This document shows positions 33,891-42,529 of a stretch of DNA of 64,000 nt, piece after piece. The DNA lies in contig DF237034.1 in NCBI GenBank assembly GCA_000708835.1, positions 62,001 through 126,000 of the forward strand. Direction: 5' to 3'. The stretch is from Klebsormidium nitens (lineage: Eukaryota > Plantae > Klebsormidiophyceae). The first letter of the stretch is position 1; every line of letters starts with the position of its first letter. The translations under genes and the position numbers were made by a program. Below the pieces are notes generated by a model that saw only the letters and a list, made by a program, of their open reading frames with translations, did no database searches and had not been told where the DNA came from.

Positions 33891-35660
33891 TCAGCTAAGA
33901 GCTCGGATTGTTACATGGAGTGCACTCTCTCGAAACCAGTCATACATGTCCGGCAACTCCGCATCAACCGCCGCGCGAAATGCTCGCAAAGGTTGAGGAA
34001 AATCTTGCAGGAAATGCACAAGAGTCGCTCCTAACTTCGGATTCCTGTAGTGCGAGATGCTGTTGCCTGCAGACATGGCGACGACAGCTGCGCTTAAAGA
34101 AACCTGCCAGAAGCAGGGGCTGTTCCTGGAGCTTCAATCAATGGTGCCCCTAATAATGGGTAACTCACATGCAAAAAGGAGCCCCGTTTTCTTCCGTGGT
34201 ACTTCCGGGACGAGAAGCATACACTTTCCCTAGCATCATAATTTGCCTCGCTCTTGTACATTCTAAAACGCTTACGAATGCTCACCATCTTTTGAAGCGT
34301 AAAACCAGTATTGCTCCAGGCGATCCAAGGCAAACTCGTCCATGACCTGCGACGATTTCAAGACTTCAGTTTTTCTCAAGAGAACGGAGGATCACAGCGA
34401 CCTGGACAGGCCGACTTCGACAAATCACATGGAGTGTACTCATGACTGAGCAAACAGGAAAAGTGCAGTGCTTTGATGGCTAGGGATAGAGATATTAATA
34501 TCCTGCAGACCACGTCAAGCCGTAGATAGTAAGGCAAGCAGCAAGGCGCCCTCATTGCCAGTGTACCTCCTGAACGAGTGATCATGCTTGACGAGAGGTT
34601 TATGCTACTTCAGGTATTGAGCAATTACCTTCTCCACGTTGCGCAGCTCCACGTCAGTGGGGGTAGAATCGGAGGAGGGTAGCAGCAGGGGTACATTCGA
34701 GATCGACAGTGTTTCTTCTAAAGAGCAACTCGCAAAAAGCACCTGATGATAGAAGAAGACAAAGCGACTGTGAGTCAACGACTTCCAACGAGTTCGACCC
34801 GTTGGCCAGGCAGGACAACAGAGAAAGCCACAGTACTGAAATTATGATGGGGCATCTAGGCAGGGCGTATCTCTGTCTCCCCGTTCAGTTCAGCTCAGGC
34901 ACTGTCAAACGCGGCTCACCACTGACAACTTGTCCACCAAAAGCTGCCGCTCATTTGCAAGCGCCTTGCTCGAGTCACTGCAAGCAGCGGGTTGTATTGG
35001 TCCGTCCACCAGGTTTTAGTGCTTTCTTAGAGAGAATCATGTGTATATCCCGGCGCATACAAATGCACCCATTCTCGCTGCCTTTGAAAACGCACTTCTG
35101 CTTCTCAATTGTTAGATGTGGCAGGTCTAAGCTCCAGGTAAGCTCCAAGTAGAGTATGCACGATTAAGTACAGGAGTCGCCTACCGGCAGATCCTCTTCA
35201 GTTTCAGGAGCTGCTCAAACGACAGCCGCTTCCCATCCCTGAGCGCTGCTAGGGACACCTTCGGCCACTTGCTCCCAGGGTTTTCCGGCTTGAGAGTTTG
35301 AAGGTATGGCAGCTCTTGGTCGATCTGGGCCTTCATCTGCGCTGCGACTCTCAAGAGTAAGGGATTGCAGAATTGGCGGGCAATTGTGAAGAACCATCAG
35401 TACAAGGAGGACTACCAGAGGAACAGGCGGTTGAGTGGTATTTCTTTGTTTCAAAGTAAAATCACAATGGTTAGAGCGGGCACGCACCTGCAACAGCTCC
35501 GGAGGCAGACCAGTGAAAACCACCGTTAAGACCCCGCTCCAGCTCACAAAGAATTGGGAGAACGTCAGTCGGACTGCTTGAGTGGCTGCGATAATCGGTT
35601 GCAGGCGGCCCTTTGGAGATGTGGCACTGGTCTTCGTTTCTTCAGAGGCACAGCCATGTT
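33891..35660 (-). CDS. Uncharacterised protein with a 2H-phosphoesterase-like internal repeat; 5' end unresolved (a possible further exon lies at ~36270-36400)
   Basis: In-phase GT-AG exons give ...FVSWSGVLTVVFTGLPPELLQ|MKAQIDQELPYLQTLKPENPGSKWPKVSLAALRDGKRLSFEQLLKLKRICR|DSSKALANERQLLVDKLSV|VLFASCSLEETLSISNVPLLL...RNVEK|VMDEFALDRLEQYWFYASKD|GNSISHYRNPKLGATLVHFLQDFPQPLRAFRAAVDAELPDMYDWFRESALHVTIRALS*. The C-terminal LHVTI is an HxT motif. Confidence 0.7.
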
Positions 35661-37195
35661 GGGCTGTCCCTGCAGGGGCATCTCTGGTTGCTATCTGATG
35701 CCAAATTCTGGTTGGATACCGGCTTTGTCTATCGGCAGCATTCTTAATCCTTACATTGGGTATTCGCTGTTTTTTAAGACCACTTTATCCAAACACCAAA
35801 GAGAGCTTCAAATCGGCGCCTCCGCCACCGCTGAAAAGCCAATCAAGACACAGGGGCAATACACTGTTGGCAGACATGGCCAAAATTGAGCGATTGTTGT
35901 CAGCTGCAACCGGACTTGCAAATGAAATCAAGAAGCTGCACTCAAATCACCCTTTCTAGAGACCATACTTTATCATCCTTTCATGCTCACGTAAAAAGCA
36001 CGCAAAGCTGAGCCCATTCCTTGGCTGAGCATGAAACTTGGATCACCAACATCTATGTCTTAGAAAGGCAGTGTTGGTCCGGATCCTTATAAGAAGACGC
36101 TCCTTACCTTTTTAACTCATCACAGAAGAAGGGGAATCACAGATGCAATTTGCCCTCAAGTTCTCGGTCCTATAGTTCTCAACTTCTGAGGGCCCAGATA
36201 CCGTATGCCCCCCCCATATAGTTTGACGAAGCAGAAACCTGTCACAAATGCTCAATGTATCTCCCTCTCACCTGTCCCATCATGGTTCGGTCCAGCGCCA
36301 GCATTTGACTTGTCAGGTGCTACGCCTGTTCCCACAGCATTCTTACAACCCTGTACATCATCCTTCTCAAGCTCTTCCTTCACTTGGCGATACATCGCCT
36401 GACTATTCAACTAATCAAAGTGTTTGATACACCTGGTGCGTTGGAGAGCATGCCTCAAGTTCGCTTCTGCTATTGGATTGACAAAGTTGAGGTGGATGTG
36501 GTGGGAATGTAGCTGTTTCTTTCAGAACCTTTACTCCTCCAAGCTGGCGCTTTCACTCCCGCGCACAATCTCCGCAATTGTGGCTGCCACCAACTCTCAT
36601 TTGAAGGGTGGCAGCAACCGCCTTCGTTCAACTTCAAGTGCATCTTGCCAGGCTTGGGAACCATGCTGCTTCCCAAACAGCCGATCGATGCATGTCCAAA
36701 GATAATGTAGGCTTTGCTGCCGTCTTCCTGAGGTCCCACTTCAGAATCCTGCCCAACTCTTGCCAATGCGGCGGCAATGCCAGTATTACTATTAGTCCGA
36801 GTCTGGGCAATAATACTGTAAAGCGGCAAGCCTGATGATCAGAACTGGAAATCCATCAAACTCCAAATATTGTCAGATCTGATCAGGCCAACTTCCAAGT
36901 TCCAAACAAAAGAAGCGCATGCAATGCCGTGAGGGGGCACCAAGCCTGCACTGAGCTTAGCGAAGTACAGCTTAGCTCTGGCTTAGCTTCGCTGGACACT
37001 TCCTGGCCCTGCCGTCGGTTGAGTAGACGTGCAATTCCGGAACAAGGGCGCACCTGGCTGCGTTGCAGAGCTCGCAGAAGTTGCCAGAAAGCTTTTCTTC
37101 AAGCTGCAGCATGGCTTGGACCGATCCGAGTGGTCGGTGCAGTAGGAGAGACAGCGCAACCTCTGTGCTGCGCTGAGCATAGCAAGTCTTTGGAG

Positions 37196-40100
37196 ATGGC
37201 TGCAACATTGCAGCGCACCGCCGCTAAAAAGTTGCATCAGGCTGCCAATTGCCGCCAGGGCACCCTGGAAGGTGGACCACTTCAAAGTGGGTCAACACGA
37301 TGCCTGGTGGTGGGCAAAAGCTTATCTCCAAAATTGGTCGGGTGGGCGAGCGAGTACCAACAACTGCAATTAGAGATTGTTGACAACCGATGGGGCTCGC
37401 GGCACCTTCAATCCACCAAGTGCTTCCAACGGGCAAATGATTGGCACGGCTTGTCCACCAGGGGCTGTCCAAATCAAAGGCGGCGGTCTTCAAAGTCCAA
37501 TGTGGGGCCACTCAATGCCGTAGCTGTTCAGAAACCTACCTACCCGGTGGAAGAGCTGGGGAAAGCCCAGGACCAGGCGTGCATCTTACAGGCCTTCAAC
37601 TGGGGGAGCTGCCGCCGGGATGCACGTTCCTGGTACCAGCTGCTTCTCGACAGTGTTGACAGTATTGAGGAGGGGGCCTTCACCGACGTTCTCCTGCCGC
37701 CGTGCTGCCAATCTCTGGATCCGCAAGGTCTGTTTCATCTTGGCCACTGTATTGGCTGCTAAATGACTTTTAGACGTGTCAGGTCACTAAAACAAGTGCT
37801 GGGATGCCAGTATCGGTGCCGACAGCTGTGCAACTTCCGACTACTGGTCAGTCTTTTCAGCTGAAAGTCGCTTCCTGAGTTGCTTTACTAAAGGCCAAAC
37901 TTGAATGATGTGTAAGATGGAAAGTGAGTGCGTAAGTTCAGGCTGCCCTCCTCTCCTGATCCAGGATTCATGCCAGTGGATTTCTACGAGCTCGACACCT
38001 CATACGGGACAGCAGAGGAGCTGCGGCAACTCATTGCAGCGCTCCACTCTCGTGGAGTGCACGCCATCGCCGACCTGGTGATCAACCGGCTGGCAGGCGT
38101 GGCCACCGACAGCACGGTCTCCTGGAAGAAGGCGGGGGGCACCGTCGCAGATGTAAGCCAGCCAGGGCGTGTTTGGTTGTCACCTGGTGTTTTGATCTTC
38201 CAACTAAAGGCCCAGAGAGAAGTCTGTGTCCAGCAGAATGGAAGTTTACATTGAAAAATAGAGACTGCACCAAGCAGTGGTGAGGCGTCCTACGAAAGCC
38301 TTTGACCTGTCTCCTTTTGGCCTGCACTAAAAGCCGGCTTTTAAGGTCGGAGTGCTTTTTGACTCCTTCCTTGAATTCGCATTCGACATTCTATTGGGGT
38401 TGTCTATCCAATCCTGGACCCTCCCTTTTCGATGCACCTCGACCTCTTCCGTGGCTTTGTTCACTTTGTCTTAGTGCGTCTGTTCATTCGGCTGTTCTCT
38501 CACACCTGCCCCTCTCACACCTGCCCCTGTCTCGCTCTTCCAGGATATTGATTGGATGGACTGGGTCTCCGGCAGCGGCTCCCCTGCTCTTCTGACAGAG
38601 GACGCGAGTGCCGACAGCTACCCCGGTCTGGCCGCTATTGACCACTCCAACCCCGTCGTCCAGAGTGATCTCAAGGGCTGGCTCCTCTGGCTGAAAACGG
38701 AAGTCGGGTTTGATGTACGTCCACTTTCCTCTTTACGCAGTTGCCCTCCAGGAATTATGTTGCTTCCTTGCTTGGCCACAAACGTCCCAATTGAAAGGAA
38801 GTGGGTTCGAAGTCCTTGATTTCGAAGGCCTCGAAGTTGTCTGCTCTTTAAGGCATCAGCCAGGTCCGAAAGCACAACGCAGCGAGCGGGTTCGCACAGC
38901 GGGCTGCCTTTACAGCGTCTCCTGACCAACGCATCTGGGCGTCCCATTACAGGGTTGGTTCTTCGACTATGCTCGAGGATTCGACCCCCAAGCTGTGGCG
39001 AAGTGAGCAGCCTTTTTCCCTGTTTTAGCCTCTCTCTCGGGCTATTATGTCAACCCCTCAATTGGCACGAAGTACTGCCTTCGAAGCTGGTACTGTATGT
39101 TTAATCGACTTCCTGTGCTTCCGTACTCCTGCATCTGGTGACAGGTTGTCACAAGGTCGTAATGATTGTTCATCTTCATCATGCGTGAGACCGCGTGCCC
39201 AACTGAGCGTACGTCGTGGTTGTGCAGTTACGGGGAGGCCAGCGGGCCGTCCCTGGCCATCGCCGACTACTGGAACCCAATGCGCTACAACGGAACATCC
39301 CTTGAATACGGCCAAGGTGAGTTGTCTGCAAATGAAACTTACGCATCTACGTGTCATTTGTTGCTGATGCAATGGTTCTGTTCTCTGCTCGCGTGAGTCA
39401 AGCAAGTCTTCTGATGCTTTTCGTTGAACGGACTTTTTGGTCAAGGGACAGATACAAGTGTGAGGGCGTGGCTTGCAGATCAGCACCGGGAGGACTTGTG
39501 CAACTGGGTCAAGGCTACCGGAGGCTCCGCAAGGGTCCTGGACTACACCACCAAGGTGGGGCCGCAATGCCTGCTCATATTGACACGTTGTCAATTGAAT
39601 GATCTGTTTCATGTTTGATTAGTGTGGTTGTGCAGCAAATTCCAGGCCTTTTGATCGCGCCAAAAAGACGATTCCTCCGTGTGTGGACGGTTCTTGTACT
39701 AACCGTCTACAGCAGCCTCACGCTACTTGGTTGCCAGCTTTTGTTCATAGATGCAAAAGCCGCTCTGTGTCGCCGACCGCAATCCCCTCTCGAGTTGCTG
39801 TGCTCTTCTCTTGCAGGGCATCCTCCAAATGGCGGTCGAGCGGTGCGAGTACTGGCGGCTGATCGATCCCAAGGGACGGCCCCCAGGCATGATCGGCTGG
39901 TGGCCCGCCAAAGTGCGCAGCGAAACTTCTCAACTTTGAGTGTCATCTCTACCGGCACTTCCTGCGTCCTCCAGCCACCTCGATGATTCCTGTCTTGCCC
40001 CGCACCTCCCTTAACCTCGACTTTCAAACCACGAGTTGCAAAGGCTTCCTCCCAAACGACGAAACCTGCTTGAACTAGGCCGTCATTTGATACCTTCACC

Positions 40101-41076
40101 AAGATTAGAAACCACCACCTCCACGCCACAATCCCGCGCACGTTTTCTGTATAACCGTTGAGTTGCCCCCAGCTCCAGCGCGGGCATCTTTCATCGCAGG
40201 CGGTGACGTTCGTGGACAACCACAGCACGGGGTCGGAGCCGCGGCACTGGCCCTTCCCGGACTGGGGCGTTATGCTGGGCTACGCCTACATCCTGACGCA
40301 CCCCGGCACGCCCTGCGTCTTCTGGGACCACGTGCACGCCTGGAAACACAAGGTGGGCGCGCGCACGCTCGCAGCCGCACCTCTGTCGTTCTGCTCCGAA
40401 CCGCGGCCGTTTGGAGGCTGTGCTGTCGGGTGCTTTCCCTTGAGCAATCAGCGGGGTGTGTTTGACACGCTTTGCCTCCATTTGGGAAGGCTGGTGGGGC
40501 CGCATGAACTCAGATCAAAAGATGAGATTGATGACCGCTAGTGTTTGAATGAGAGGATAAGAGGCGCCGTTCTGTGCCCTGCCAAGCGCTGATTTTCGTG
40601 CTGCCTCCAGGATGCCATCTACTCGCTGCTCGCGGTCCGCCGCCGCAACGGCATCCACGCGCAGAGTTCCGTCCGGATCACCGCGTGCCACTCCGACTTG
40701 TACGTGGCGCAGGTCGGTTCTTTCGATGGGCCCGATCAGGCCTTTCGGGGGGTGTACGTCAAGCTTGGGCCAAGCATGAACCTCCGGGGGGGCGGCCCGC
40801 CAGGTGAGTGGAGACGCAAGCGGCCCTTGGGACAAAGCATCGTAGGTGCATCAACTTTCCGGAGAAAGACGGCTCCGCTCAGCTTGTCGCGGTTTGTCCT
40901 GCGGACGAACCAAATGCATGCCTCCTGTTGGAAAGCAACTTCAATTGACGGCTGGATTATGTTTTGACTAGGTCAAGATCAGCTGCACGGTTCATAGCGT
41001 TTGTACTCTATCTGCAGGGAGCGATTGGGTTGTGGCTGCCTCAGGTCATGACTACTGTGTTTGGGAACAGCGGTAA
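37196..41076 (+). CDS. Plant-type alpha-amylase (GH13) homologue, probably plastid-targeted, with substituted catalytic residues
   Basis: Uninterrupted spliced frame: ILQAFNWGS...[12 protein letters not shown]|[19 protein letters not shown]...[10 protein letters not shown]|...[28 protein letters not shown]|[10 protein letters not shown]|...LAIADYW|[11 protein letters not shown]...DYTTK|[32 protein letters not shown]|[12 protein letters not shown]...[18 protein letters not shown]|...|[13 protein letters not shown] ~125-aa transit-peptide-like leader starts at ATG 37196. Confidence 0.92.
38497..38526. repeat. Perfect 15-bp tandem duplication in an amylase-like gene intron
   Basis: CTCTCACACCTGCCC occurs twice head to tail. 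Confidence 0.85.
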
Positions 41077-42529
41077 TCCTCGAATGCGAAAGGCTCTTTC
41101 GGCTCAGAGAATGGACTGGCAAGCTAGTCTGACCACAAATAGATTGACAGCACCATGACACTGAAAGAGGTGTTCTCAGAAGGTCAGACAAGCTTGTTGA
41201 GGTTGGACATCTTATAGTGGTGCCGGCAATTGAACAACCGGTTGTGCCGGCCTGTGCGGTATGTTGCACGCCCCAGGTAACACTTGATAGGTATGACCAG
41301 GTTGGCAACTTGGCATGGAGCGTGAGTGTCGCTTGCAGAGCGGCTCCTCTTGCTGCAGATTTGATTCCTAAAAGTATAAGCAGAACAGCGAGGAATGGTC
41401 ACTTTTGATTATTTACGCCCTGAGCCACGACGCGAAAGTGGTCGGAGCTATCATCTTTATTTTGAACGTGCAATCTAGGCGCTGATCCGCTTCCATCGGC
41501 CTACAGTGCCGGAACATGGACAGTCGTTTGACAAGCTGTTTCGAGACCAGTGTGAACCTCTTATTACACAATGGAGTCATTGGCAGTACGTGCCAACTCC
41601 AACGGTTAACCTTCCTGGCACGTACTATAAAGGTACGTACACACCTAAGTTGGCGGCCGGCCTTGTCATTTACGGCCTGCATAATCCACGGGCCGTGCTA
41701 GGCTGCCGCTTGACGTGTTGCGCCGATTGAGATCCGAGTCTGCAGGATTCAAGCACACCGACTATATTGCTTGACCGCGGCCGCCCGGATCGTGCCTCCT
41801 TTGCGTTGATGTTGCTTGGGGGTTCGACCTTTTCTAAACCATTGTCGTGATCGTGGTACATAGCATGTCTGCATAGAAGCTATGATCGATATACATGCGG
41901 CCGCCTAGCTAGTATGTTAGTACGCCACACATATACGTGCGTACGTGACTGAAAAAACACAACATTCGGCTCATGGATCAGTAACTGAACATGGCCCCTA
42001 TATTAAGTGAGGTTCGCCTCTCGTCAGCTATAAGAACATATGTGCGAGGCACTACACATGCATAAGTTAACCTACTTGGATATTCATGCATGTATATGTT
42101 AGAGTATTATCTGCCGCCTCTTTACGGGCACTGAAATGTGCTGCAGGCGCAATACTAAGGGCGCCACATAGGCCATGCAATAAATGACTCACCTGAGGGG
42201 CTCAGCGCTGGCTGACAGTGCATTACTGTAAGGTGCATCATTATTGCATCATCGATCGGAATGTGTTTGCAGTCTATTCGTCACAGCCTGCTTTGAGGCA
42301 GAAAATCGGTGGAACCATGTCAATCAGGAAGCCTTTCGATGGCGCCACCATATGAACCTGCATAACGATATTAGATAAGCCATCCTATGTTAACAATTTG
42401 AAGATGGGGCCAGTACGTTCCGGCTGGTTCTGTAGCCATGTTTACCAGAGTTGAATAGCTATGTAAGAGCGGAATCGGACCTAGGCTTTCCTATCCAAAA
42501 AGGTTCTCACACAAATGAGTGCAGGCCTT

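What the first reader, a model, noticed from the sequence alone, without database searches (positions are those of the whole stretch)
37196..41076. Intact alpha-amylase homologue with dismantled catalytic machinery but a retained starch-binding Trp-Trp site: candidate plastid pseudo-amylase
Seen (codons read directly): region I VINH becomes VINR (CGG 38087-89). Region II GWRxD becomes GWFFD (invariant Arg to Phe, 38959-61; nucleophile Asp kept, 38965-67). Region III AE/GExW becomes ADYW (acid/base Glu to Asp, 39265-67). Region IV NHDT becomes NHST (Asp to Ser, 40224-26). Domain B is shortened. The frame, splice sites, C-terminal domain and GWWP motif are intact, and there is a transit-peptide-like leader without the CBM45s of AMY3. 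Known: GH13 catalysis needs Asp/Glu/Asp (barley AMY1 D180/E205/D291) plus Arg178, and W278/W279 in GWWP form surface binding site 1. Inactive starch-enzyme paralogues such as BAM4, BAM9 and SS5 act as regulators in plants. Inference: four independent active-site losses in a preserved ORF indicate a non-catalytic glucan-binding regulator or scaffold of starch metabolism. I know of no described inactive alpha-amylase with that role in the green lineage.
Basis: partly seen in the sequence, partly recalled or inferred. Interest (0 to 1): 0.8.

Follow-up and report, generated by a model that had tools for sequence, protein, structure and literature searches.

The report
Conserved dead alpha-amylase of streptophyte algae
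This Klebsormidium nitens gene is a spliced, expressed copy of a plant-type starch-cutting enzyme that has lost its catalytic residues, and the same dead form has been kept under purifying selection in other streptophyte algae and one liverwort, so it probably has a non-catalytic job that nobody has described.

Summary
A 10-exon gene (37196-41076, +) encodes a 535-aa protein identical to GenBank GAQ81605.1, "alpha amylase [Klebsormidium nitens]". All nine introns are confirmed by spliced RNA contigs from four studies, with no base differences.

The fold is barley-type alpha-amylase (PDB E 1e-105; Foldseek TM 0.89). The active site is remodelled: His->Arg, Arg->Phe, Glu->Asp, Asp->Ser, and also Tyr->Phe.

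This is not a one-off. Seventeen proteins share the same state. They come from Klebsormidium, Spirogloea (3 copies), Mesotaenium, Closterium (many strains) and the liverwort Calypogeia fissa (2 copies). They form one clade (SH-aLRT 100). All 251 other plant-type amylases examined are canonical.

dN/dS is 0.07 within Klebsormidium and 0.16-0.21 within Closterium.

- Domain B is not shortened (83 residues against a median of 86). It is degenerate instead.
- The Trp-Trp site is not kept across the clade (Leu-Leu in Closterium).

Plastid targeting and a role in starch remain inference. I found no paper describing this clade.

Verdict: a real, ancient alpha-amylase pseudoenzyme. It is a new variant of a known kind (BAM4/BAM9, ISA2, SS5, MKIP1).

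The parts
37196..41076 (+). Whole coding region of the pseudo-alpha-amylase gene. It has 10 exons and encodes 535 aa, identical to GAQ81605.1 / A0A1Y1HSK3.
   Evidence: Exon model and translation; identity to P0151; accession numbers; all nine junctions seen in spliced RNA contigs.
36700..37195 (+). 5' untranslated leader, minimum extent. The RNA contigs continue about 430-455 nt further upstream than the stretch I laid.
   Evidence: Contigs are contiguous from 36700 to 37725 in X1, X2 and X14. There is no in-frame ATG between the stop at 36836-38 and 37196.
37196..37579 (+). N-terminal leader, residues 1-128. It is unconserved, basic, Ser/Thr-rich and lacks CBM45, so it looks like a transit peptide.
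   Evidence: Composition of the leaders in 5 orthologues; AF2 pLDDT below 50 for residues 14-116; no Pfam hit.
37965..38152 (+). Exon 2. It carries Tyr->Phe179 (GFMP, 37967-69) and region I VINR (Arg219, 38087-89).
   Evidence: PF00128 hit on this exon.
38089..38952 (+). Domain B segment, residues about 220-296, spanning the end of exon 2, exon 3 and the introns on either side of exon 3. Its length is normal but its consensus features are lost.
   Evidence: Spacing of 83 against a median of 86; conserved Gly, Phe, Asp and Ala-Pro columns of active enzymes are not kept; pLDDT 41-52.
38953..39002 (+). Exon 4. Region II reads GWFFD: the invariant Arg is replaced by Phe300 (38959-61) and the nucleophile Asp302 is kept (38965-67).
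   Evidence: This position varies within the clade: F, V, C or S.
39228..39316 (+). Exon 5. Region III reads ADYW: the acid/base Glu is replaced by Asp327 (39265-67).
39817..39912 (+). Exon 7. It carries the GWWP surface-site-1 motif (39895-39906).
   Evidence: The motif is WW in 4 genera and LL in Closterium.
39913..40199 (+). Intron 7. It is partly retained in RNA, and retention would place a stop codon at 39937-39939.
   Evidence: An unspliced contig covering 39884-40229 is present in all 4 runs at lower k-mer depth; reading frame.
40200..40352 (+). Exon 8. Region IV reads NHST: His409 is kept and the transition-state Asp is replaced by Ser410 (40224-26).
40611..41076 (+). Exons 9-10 with the intron between them: the C-terminal beta-sheet domain (Alpha-amyl_C2) and the TAA stop at 41074-76.
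   Evidence: PF07821 at 59 bits; pLDDT above 90.
41077..41536 (+). 3' untranslated region.
   Evidence: Spliced contigs run to 41535/41536 in X10 and X2.

Best explanation
This is a bona fide, expressed nuclear gene of Klebsormidium nitens. It belongs to an ancient streptophyte clade of plant-type (GH13_6-like) alpha-amylase paralogues that lost hydrolytic competence in their common ancestor and have been kept since as pseudoenzymes. [quoted passage not shown] Five active-site residues are fixed in non-catalytic states: Tyr->Phe, His->Arg, Glu->Asp, Asp->Ser/Thr, and the invariant Arg replaced by variable F/V/C/S. Domain B, which forms one wall of the cleft, has degenerated. The nucleophile Asp, the region IV His, the Asp-His pair of the IDH motif at the end of domain B (273/274) and Lys369 are retained, as is an aromatic surface site in most members. 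I therefore think the protein most likely still binds alpha-glucan like a lectin. After import by its N-terminal leader, probably into the plastid, it would act as a non-catalytic binder, regulator or scaffold of starch turnover, in the way BAM4/BAM9, ISA2 and SS5 do. Shown: the gene model, expression, the residue changes, the fold, clade-wide conservation and purifying selection. Inferred: loss of activity (very likely), glucan binding, plastid location and a starch-related role.
For: Gene and expression: the 10-exon model equals the database protein P0151. All nine junctions appear in spliced contigs of 4 runs from 4 studies, with no base differences.

Fold: phmmer against barley AMY1 gives 2e-105 over residues 130-534. 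The AF2 core has pLDDT above 90, and Foldseek gives TM 0.89 to 1ht6, 2qps and 1amy.

Active site: 251 of 256 plant-type domains are H-R-D-E-H-D, and only this clade is R-[FCS]-D-D-H-[ST]. Of 85 columns that are at least 93% conserved in active enzymes, 59 are fully kept and only 8 are lost in every member. Most of those 8 are active-site positions: Y179F, H219R, R220, R300, E327D and D410S/T.

Clade: it is monophyletic with SH-aLRT 100 on a stem of 0.76. Seventeen proteins from 5 genera share the state, and so does an unidentified relative in a genomic contig from public run SRR14092358. The profile search shows a bit-score gap between members (476-791) and everything else (460 or less). Intron positions are shared between K. 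nitens and Calypogeia.

Selection: dN/dS is 0.069 (bootstrap 0.044-0.110, dS 1.07, 292 codons) between K. nitens and its relative. It is 0.16-0.21 for the domain among three Closterium genomes, against 0.48-0.59 for their leaders.

Leaders: 40-163 aa, basic, Ser/Thr-rich and unconserved in all orthologues.

Precedents: non-catalytic starch-enzyme paralogues BAM9 (PMC12046210, PMC8774843) and the ISA1/ISA2 non-catalytic functions (PMC12510319).
Against: - No biochemical assay exists. BmaN1, a GH13_45 enzyme with His in place of the transition-state Asp, is still active (PMC5347038), so an aberrant triad does not prove inactivity.
- Here the nucleophile is kept and the acid/base is still a carboxylate, conserved as Asp in every member.
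- The Trp-Trp surface site is Leu-Leu in Closterium, and the domain C 'sugar tongs' Tyr is Met in Klebsormidium.
- Domain B is degenerate, so glucan binding may be weakened.
- Localisation was not predicted with any tool.
- MKIP1 shows that a dead GH13 paralogue can leave starch metabolism altogether (PMC13172542).
- The clade evolves faster than active amylases: end branches are 0.5-1.4 against a median of 0.35.
- PF00128 scores fall to 20-37 bits, against 66 for active Marchantia.
Confidence: 0.5

Rival explanations
1. It is a conserved pseudoenzyme whose selected function has nothing to do with alpha-glucans. The barrel would serve as a protein-protein or protein-RNA interaction platform, as in MKIP1 (the former class III branching enzyme in the MatK splicing complex) or 4F2hc/rBAT.
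For: The pseudoenzyme facts are the same as for the best explanation. In addition, domain B is degenerate. The WW surface site is lost in Closterium. Clade-specific invariant residues with no counterpart in active enzymes (C129, F184, D308, R333, Y366, W423, G499) suggest a new interface. MKIP1 is a precedent that also arose in streptophyte algae (PMC13172542).
Against: Cleft residues that contact sugar in active enzymes (Asp302, His409, Asp273/His274, Lys369) are invariant in the clade. That is not expected if the cleft were irrelevant. No partner or new domain is visible.
Confidence: 0.25
2. It is still an enzyme. It would have a remodelled active site (Asp nucleophile, Asp acid/base, Arg219, Ser410) and a changed activity or substrate, for example a very slow or specialised glucanase or transferase, or activity on phosphorylated glucans.
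For: The replacement residues are themselves invariant (R219 7/7, D327 7/7, F179 7/7, S/T410) under strong purifying selection. The nucleophile Asp and His409 are kept. BmaN1 is active with an aberrant triad (PMC5347038).
Against: Five catalytic-centre changes occur together. The position of the Arg that is invariant in all 251 canonical plant-type amylases in the set, and from memory across GH13, is free to vary here (F/V/C/S), which argues that the -1 subsite chemistry is no longer used. From memory of mutagenesis work on barley AMY1 and other GH13 enzymes, changes at the acid/base and at the transition-state Asp each cost orders of magnitude in kcat; I did not re-check this in a paper. Domain B, needed for the cleft and the Ca2+ sites, is degenerate.
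Confidence: 0.15
3. It is a decaying pseudogene, or an assembly or annotation artefact.
For: Several catalytic residues are lost; intron 7 is partly retained in RNA.
Against: The ORF is intact and all junctions are canonical. RNA contigs from four studies carry the spliced form with no differences. Orthologues in five genera are intact and carry the same substitutions. dN/dS is 0.07-0.21. All three Spirogloea copies and both Calypogeia copies are retained.
Confidence: 0.02

Closest known systems
Barley alpha-amylases AMY1/AMY2 (PDB 1ht6, 1amy) and the plant AtAMY1/rice-type lineage (GH13_6)
   Same: About 44% identity over the whole mature enzyme, with the same three-domain fold (E 2e-105; Foldseek TM 0.89). 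In the tree the clade sits with this lineage and a chlorophyte group, not with the AMY2- or AMY3-type groups. Conserved regions I-IV are recognisable. GWWP corresponds to surface site 1.
   Different: His93->Arg, Arg178->Phe, Glu205->Asp, Asp291->Ser and Tyr52->Phe (barley AMY1 numbering from memory and from the alignment). Domain B consensus features are lost. A basic leader of about 128 aa replaces the secretory signal peptide.
Non-catalytic paralogues of starch enzymes in plants: BAM4, BAM9, ISA2, SS5
   Same: A paralogue of a starch-metabolising enzyme with substituted catalytic residues that is conserved and expressed. BAM9 is plastidial and activates AMY3 (PMC12046210, PMC8774843). ISA2 is itself a dead GH13 member (PMC12510319).
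   Different: It derives from a different enzyme: an alpha-amylase proper, for which no inactive clade is reported in the AMY1-AMY6 survey (PMC6426938). Its distribution is streptophyte algae plus one leafy liverwort, and it is absent from the angiosperm models in which the others were found. No partner, localisation or phenotype is known.
MKIP1 (former class III starch branching enzyme BE1)
   Same: A GH13 starch-enzyme paralogue that lost its catalytic centre, remains under constraint and arose within streptophyte algae (PMC13172542).
   Different: MKIP1 carries a CBM48 and a specific charged insert, is universal in land plants, and works in plastid intron splicing. The pseudo-amylase has neither extra domain and has been lost from most land plants.
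[quoted passage not shown]
   Same: A natural GH13 group in which the transition-state Asp is replaced (PMC5347038).
   Different: BmaN1 keeps the Glu acid/base, is reported to have only that one triad residue replaced, and is active. Here Glu, the region II Arg, the region I His and the -1 subsite Tyr are changed as well.
4F2hc / rBAT (SLC3 heavy chains)
   Same: GH13-fold proteins that are non-enzymatic members of the family (mentioned in PMC11239784; otherwise from memory).
   Different: They are animal membrane glycoproteins related to oligo-1,6-glucosidases and have an unrelated function.

Membership tests
GH13 plant-type alpha-amylase sequence family (GH13_6-like) | (beta/alpha)8 barrel with domain B and the C-terminal beta-sheet domain, and full-length homology to plant AMYs | tested here: met
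   phmmer against barley AMY1 gives 2e-105 over residues 130-534. Foldseek gives TM 0.89. PF00128 scores 37 bits and PF07821 59 bits. Domain B is modelled with low confidence.
GH13 plant-type alpha-amylase sequence family (GH13_6-like) | Conserved sequence regions I-IV recognisable | tested here: met
   DLVINR, GFDGWFFD, AIADYW and FVDNHST align to regions I-IV.
Functional alpha-amylase (EC 3.2.1.1, GH13 retaining mechanism) | Catalytic triad: Asp nucleophile, Glu acid/base, Asp transition-state stabiliser | tested here: not met
   Asp302 is present, but Glu is replaced by Asp327 and Asp by Ser410. The same holds in all 17 clade members.
Functional alpha-amylase (EC 3.2.1.1, GH13 retaining mechanism) | Invariant region II Arg and region I His | tested here: not met
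   Arg is replaced by Phe300 (F/V/C/S across the clade) and His by Arg219. Both residues are present in all 251 canonical sequences.
Functional alpha-amylase (EC 3.2.1.1, GH13 retaining mechanism) | Measured hydrolysis of alpha-1,4-glucan | not testable with these tools
   Needs an assay of recombinant protein.
AMY3-type plastidial alpha-amylase | N-terminal tandem CBM45 (PF23166) and membership of the AMY3 clade | tested here: not met
   No PF23166 hit. The tree places it away from the AMY3-type sequences P0168 and P0177.
Conserved pseudoenzyme (non-catalytic paralogue under selection) | Catalytic residues lost while the fold and ORF are preserved in several lineages | tested here: met
Conserved pseudoenzyme (non-catalytic paralogue under selection) | Purifying selection (dN/dS well below 1) | tested here: met
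   0.069 (0.044-0.110) in Klebsormidium and 0.16-0.21 in Closterium. These are Nei-Gojobori estimates on exons found by tblastn.
Conserved pseudoenzyme (non-catalytic paralogue under selection) | Expressed as a correctly spliced mRNA | tested here: met
   All nine junctions appear in contigs of 4 runs from 4 studies.
Starch-metabolism regulator of the BAM4/BAM9/ISA2/SS5 kind | Plastid localisation | tested here: inconclusive
   The only evidence is leader composition: basic, Ser/Thr-rich, few acidic residues, unconserved, 40-163 aa in all orthologues. No targeting predictor was available.
Starch-metabolism regulator of the BAM4/BAM9/ISA2/SS5 kind | Binding to starch or to a starch enzyme, and a starch phenotype on loss | not testable with these tools
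   Needs binding assays, pull-downs and mutants.

The most novel reading that the evidence does not exclude
An alpha-amylase-derived pseudoenzyme arose before Klebsormidiophyceae split from the lineage leading to Zygnematophyceae and land plants. It kept a sugar-binding cleft and works in the plastid as a non-catalytic regulator of starch turnover, for instance by occupying or marking the granule surface or by modulating active amylases as BAM9 does for AMY3. It was then lost from most land plants but kept in at least one leafy liverwort. That would add a previously unrecognised component to the ancestral streptophyte starch machinery.
Probability: 0.3. Interest if true: 0.75.

Novelty: new variant of a known kind. 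Interest (0 to 1): 0.6.

Why it matters
Regulation of starch breakdown in plants depends heavily on dead paralogues of its enzymes (BAM4, BAM9, ISA2, SS5, LSF1). No inactive alpha-amylase has been part of that picture, and the published survey of plant AMY genes states that the active site is conserved in all subfamilies (PMC6426938).

This clade has been conserved since before Klebsormidium diverged from the Zygnematophyceae and land-plant lineage, yet it is annotated simply as "alpha amylase". That has three consequences:
- Amylase gene counts in streptophyte algae are overestimates of enzyme numbers.
- It provides a new, testable candidate regulator of algal starch or pyrenoid-starch metabolism.
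- It is a clean natural experiment on which GH13 residues serve catalysis (lost) and which serve fold and binding (kept).

Its loss from most land plants may also bear on how starch control changed when plants moved onto land.

Tried and rejected
- **Full spliced protein as a query.** It has no window reference, so I did not type it. I searched with exon 8, recovered the orthologue P0002, and through it the identical database entry P0151. P0151 was then used everywhere.
- **Pfam on single exons.** Only weak hits; superseded by the full-length scan.
- **First hmmalign residue mapping.** It was offset by the --trim option and gave meaningless states. It was redone correctly, and one search should be ignored.
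- **Closterium dN/dS.** The loci hold extra diverged exon-like copies and the gene models are poor. I used the best HSP per position and required the NIES-67 codon to reproduce its protein, so the values are approximate.
- **Klebsormidium dN/dS.** Restricting each HSP to its own exon gave 0.069.
- **Shortened domain B.** Rejected.
- **WW site as a clade-wide feature.** Rejected.
- **Synteny.** A GDT1 gene lies upstream in all three Closterium loci but is absent from this window.
- **Rfam on 35500-42500.** Nothing found.
- **Literature searches** for an inactive or pseudo alpha-amylase in plants or streptophyte algae. No description found, but the library lacks most subscription journals, so this is not proof of absence.
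- **Not done:** a targeting prediction (no tool), side-chain geometry of the model (coordinates are not returned), and PAML or RELAX tests.
Full report
**What is there.**
Reading the three forward frames of 37100-41200 and joining the open stretches at GT..AG sites gives a 10-exon gene. The exons are 37196-37727, 37965-38152, 38544-38714, 38953-39002, 39228-39316, 39479-39555, 39817-39912, 40200-40352, 40611-40803 and 41018-41076. The CDS is 1608 nt and the protein 535 aa.

The protein is letter-for-letter identical to database protein P0151. That entry is GAQ81605.1 / UniProt A0A1Y1HSK3, "alpha amylase [Klebsormidium nitens]". The window is therefore nuclear DNA of this streptophyte (charophyte) alga, and the gene is already annotated, but as an ordinary enzyme.

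No in-frame ATG lies between the upstream stop (36836-38) and 37196. The window holds no second amylase-like sequence.

**Is it real and expressed?**
Twenty public runs hold 29-61% of the sampled words of the 3.9-kb stretch, which is roughly the exonic share. I laid contigs of four runs from four studies on 36700-41600. All nine introns are skipped exactly at the predicted GT..AG sites in every run. No base differences or indels were listed over the parts the contigs cover.

The runs are recorded only as "RNA?". The spliced contigs show that they contain cDNA of this gene.

An unspliced contig across intron 7 (39884-40229) is also present in all four runs at lower k-mer depth. Retention would stop translation at 39937-39939.

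**The observation.**
- Arg219 (CGG 38087-89) in VINR.
- Phe300 and Asp302 in GWFFD.
- Asp327 in ADYW.
- Ser410 in NHST.
- GWWP at residues 396-399.

The residue-by-residue alignment to barley AMY1 and AMY2 puts these at the region I His, region II Arg and nucleophile Asp, region III Glu and region IV Asp.

The protein matches barley AMY1 at E 2e-105 over residues 130-534. An AlphaFold2 model built on a 72-sequence alignment has pLDDT above 90 for 345 residues. Its best Foldseek matches are barley AMY1 and AMY2, at TM 0.89 normalised by target.

One claim fails. Domain B is not shortened, because 83 residues separate the region I Asn from the region II Asp, against a median of 86 (range 69-101) in 251 active enzymes. 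What is true is that domain B has lost most of the columns conserved in active enzymes: Gly229, Phe234, Asp253, the Ala-Pro-Asp before IDH. It is modelled at pLDDT 41-52. From memory, several of these positions are Ca2+ ligands in barley AMY1; I did not verify that in a paper.

**Is it a lone oddity?**
It is not. An exhaustive phmmer search with exon 8 found a 518-aa protein of Spirogloea muscicola (P0002). It is 56% identical to the K. nitens protein and reads VINR / AWCFD / GDVW / NHST.

Word-index searches with P0002, with a clade profile and with the liverwort member, plus a cluster look-up, gave 17 proteins with the same state:
- K. nitens.
- Three Spirogloea copies.
- Mesotaenium endlicherianum.
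- Closterium strains NIES-53, -64, -65, -67, -68, Naga37s-1 and Yama58-4.
- Two copies on chromosome-scale scaffolds of the leafy liverwort Calypogeia fissa.

A 3.3-kb genomic contig from run SRR14092358 (L004) carries exons 3-10 of a further, unidentified relative. It reads GWVFD / ADYW / NHST / GWWP.

Among 256 near-full-length plant-type amylase domains gathered in these searches, 251 are H-R-D-E-H-D. One Oxalis sequence has a single Arg->Cys. Only this clade is R-[FCS]-D-D-H-[ST].

In a maximum-likelihood tree of 72 sequences (LG+C20, quick search) the clade is one branch with SH-aLRT 100 on a stem of 0.76. It lies with the AtAMY1/rice-type lineage and a chlorophyte group, not with the AMY2- or AMY3-type groups. 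Its exact sister is unresolved.

The profile search shows a clear score gap: members score 476-791 bits and everything else 460 or less. K. nitens and Calypogeia share intron positions after residues 240, 297, about 314, about 344, 369, about 401 and 452.

The changes are therefore one ancestral event. It is older than the split of Klebsormidiophyceae from the Zygnematophyceae and land-plant lineage, and it has been inherited since. They are not four independent hits in this gene.

I saw canonical sequences only from Chlorokybus, Marchantia, Riccia, Sphagnum, Physcomitrium, Diphasiastrum and the seed plants. Chara, Coleochaete, Zygnema and Penium did not appear in the lists, which says nothing either way.

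**Selection.**
Nei-Gojobori estimates were made on tblastn-defined exons:
- K. nitens against the L004 relative: dN/dS 0.069 (bootstrap 2.5-97.5%: 0.044-0.110), dS 1.07, 292 codons, 89% amino-acid identity.
- Three Closterium genomes: 0.16-0.21 for the amylase-like domain (dS 0.55-0.77), against 0.48-0.59 for the N-terminal leader.

These are rough. Exons were found by protein similarity, dS is near saturation, and the Closterium loci are messy. They are nevertheless far from 1. They agree with the retention of all three Spirogloea homeologues and both Calypogeia copies. A decaying pseudogene is excluded.

**What was lost and what was kept.**
Of 85 alignment columns that are at least 93% conserved in the 251 active enzymes, 59 are fully kept in the clade and 18 are mixed. 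Eight are lost in every member: Trp166, Tyr179 (always Phe), His219 (always Arg), Arg220, Gly229, Arg300 (F, C, S, and V in L004), Glu327 (always Asp) and Asp410 (Ser, or Thr in one Closterium group).

Most of the universal losses are therefore catalytic-centre residues, while the fold-defining positions stay. Kept without exception are the nucleophile Asp302, His409, Asp273/His274 and Trp244. Lys369 is kept in six of seven members, the exception being Met in the partial Mesotaenium model.

The clade has also acquired its own invariant residues: Cys129, Phe184, Asp308, Arg333, Tyr366, Trp423 and Gly499.

The old Arg position drifts freely while the neighbouring nucleophile is frozen. That argues that transition-state chemistry is no longer used, but that the cleft is still under constraint.

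The Trp-Trp surface site is present in four genera but is Leu-Leu in all Closterium members. Only 128 of 251 active enzymes have WW at all. The domain C position equivalent to the barley "sugar tongs" Tyr is Phe in most members and Met in Klebsormidium.

**Leader.**
All orthologues carry an unconserved extension of 40-163 residues. It is basic, rich in Ser/Thr and poor in acidic residues near the N-terminus. It is disordered in the model, and it has no CBM45 or other Pfam domain. This fits an organellar transit peptide and differs from AMY3's CBM45 architecture. No targeting predictor was available, so plastid import remains an inference.

**Mechanism.**
My best reading, at about 0.5, is a non-catalytic, lectin-like alpha-glucan-binding protein imported into the plastid that regulates or scaffolds starch turnover. 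This follows the pattern of BAM9, a pseudoenzyme that binds and activates AMY3 (PMC12046210; PMC8774843), and of the non-catalytic functions of ISA1/ISA2 (PMC12510319).

The rivals are:
- A pseudoenzyme recruited to a non-glucan role (about 0.25). MKIP1 is the precedent: a former branching enzyme that lost its catalytic centre, remained constrained, arose in streptophyte algae and now works with MatK in plastid intron splicing (PMC13172542).
- A remodelled but still active enzyme (about 0.15). BmaN1 is the precedent: it is active although His replaces the transition-state Asp (PMC5347038). BmaN1 keeps the Glu, though, and here five residues are changed and the Arg site is unconstrained.
- Pseudogene or artefact (0.02 or less).

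**Novelty.**
The published survey of 472 plant AMY genes divides them into AMY1-AMY6. It states that the active site (E205, D291) and SBS1 are conserved across the subfamilies and mentions no inactive clade (PMC6426938).

Six full-text searches found no paper describing an inactive alpha-amylase in plants or streptophyte algae. The library lacks most subscription journals, so this is not proof.

That would make the present gene an extra paralogue beside canonical enzymes; I did not test it.

Dead paralogues of starch enzymes, and dead GH13 proteins, are a well-known kind. This is a new variant of that kind: the first for alpha-amylase proper, with an unusual phylogenetic distribution.

**Verdict.**
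The specific claims about a shortened domain B and a diagnostic Trp-Trp site are not supported. The plastid and starch-regulator role is plausible but unproven.

Noticed in passing
window 39884-40229 (intron 7, 39913-40199): All four RNA runs contain an unspliced contig across intron 7, at roughly a tenth to a third of the k-mer depth of the neighbouring spliced contigs. Retention would end the protein at a TGA at 39937-39939, before region IV and domain C.
   Followed up: partly
window about 36245-37195: The spliced RNA contigs are contiguous with the genome from 36700 to the ATG, and their lengths show that they continue about 430-455 nt further upstream. This implies either a 5' leader of about 950 nt or an overlap with an upstream transcript. 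Short upstream ORFs exist, for example 36205-36402.
   Followed up: no
L001, L002, L003 (Closterium NIES-67, NIES-64, Yama58-4 loci): The Closterium orthologue loci (7-16 kb) contain extra, diverged exon-like copies inside introns: several query segments hit two to four places. One database model (P0003) repeats the FVDNHSTGS exon. This recalls the twin-exon finding s1-326888 in the K. nitens AMY3-type gene.
   Followed up: no
L001 1-2224, L002 1-1789, L003 (fused in model P0152): A GDT1/UPF0016 (PF01169) gene lies directly upstream of the pseudo-amylase in NIES-67 and NIES-64 and is fused to it in the Yama58-4 gene model. There is no GDT1 in the K. nitens window.
   Followed up: partly
P0234 (Oxalis oulophora): An otherwise canonical plant alpha-amylase with Cys in place of the invariant region II Arg. 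It is the only other deviation among the 256 domains and could be a sequencing error or a young pseudogene.
   Followed up: no
P0002, P0357, P0358 and P0155, P0356: All three Spirogloea muscicola copies and both Calypogeia fissa copies of the pseudo-amylase are intact and carry the same motif state.
   Followed up: partly
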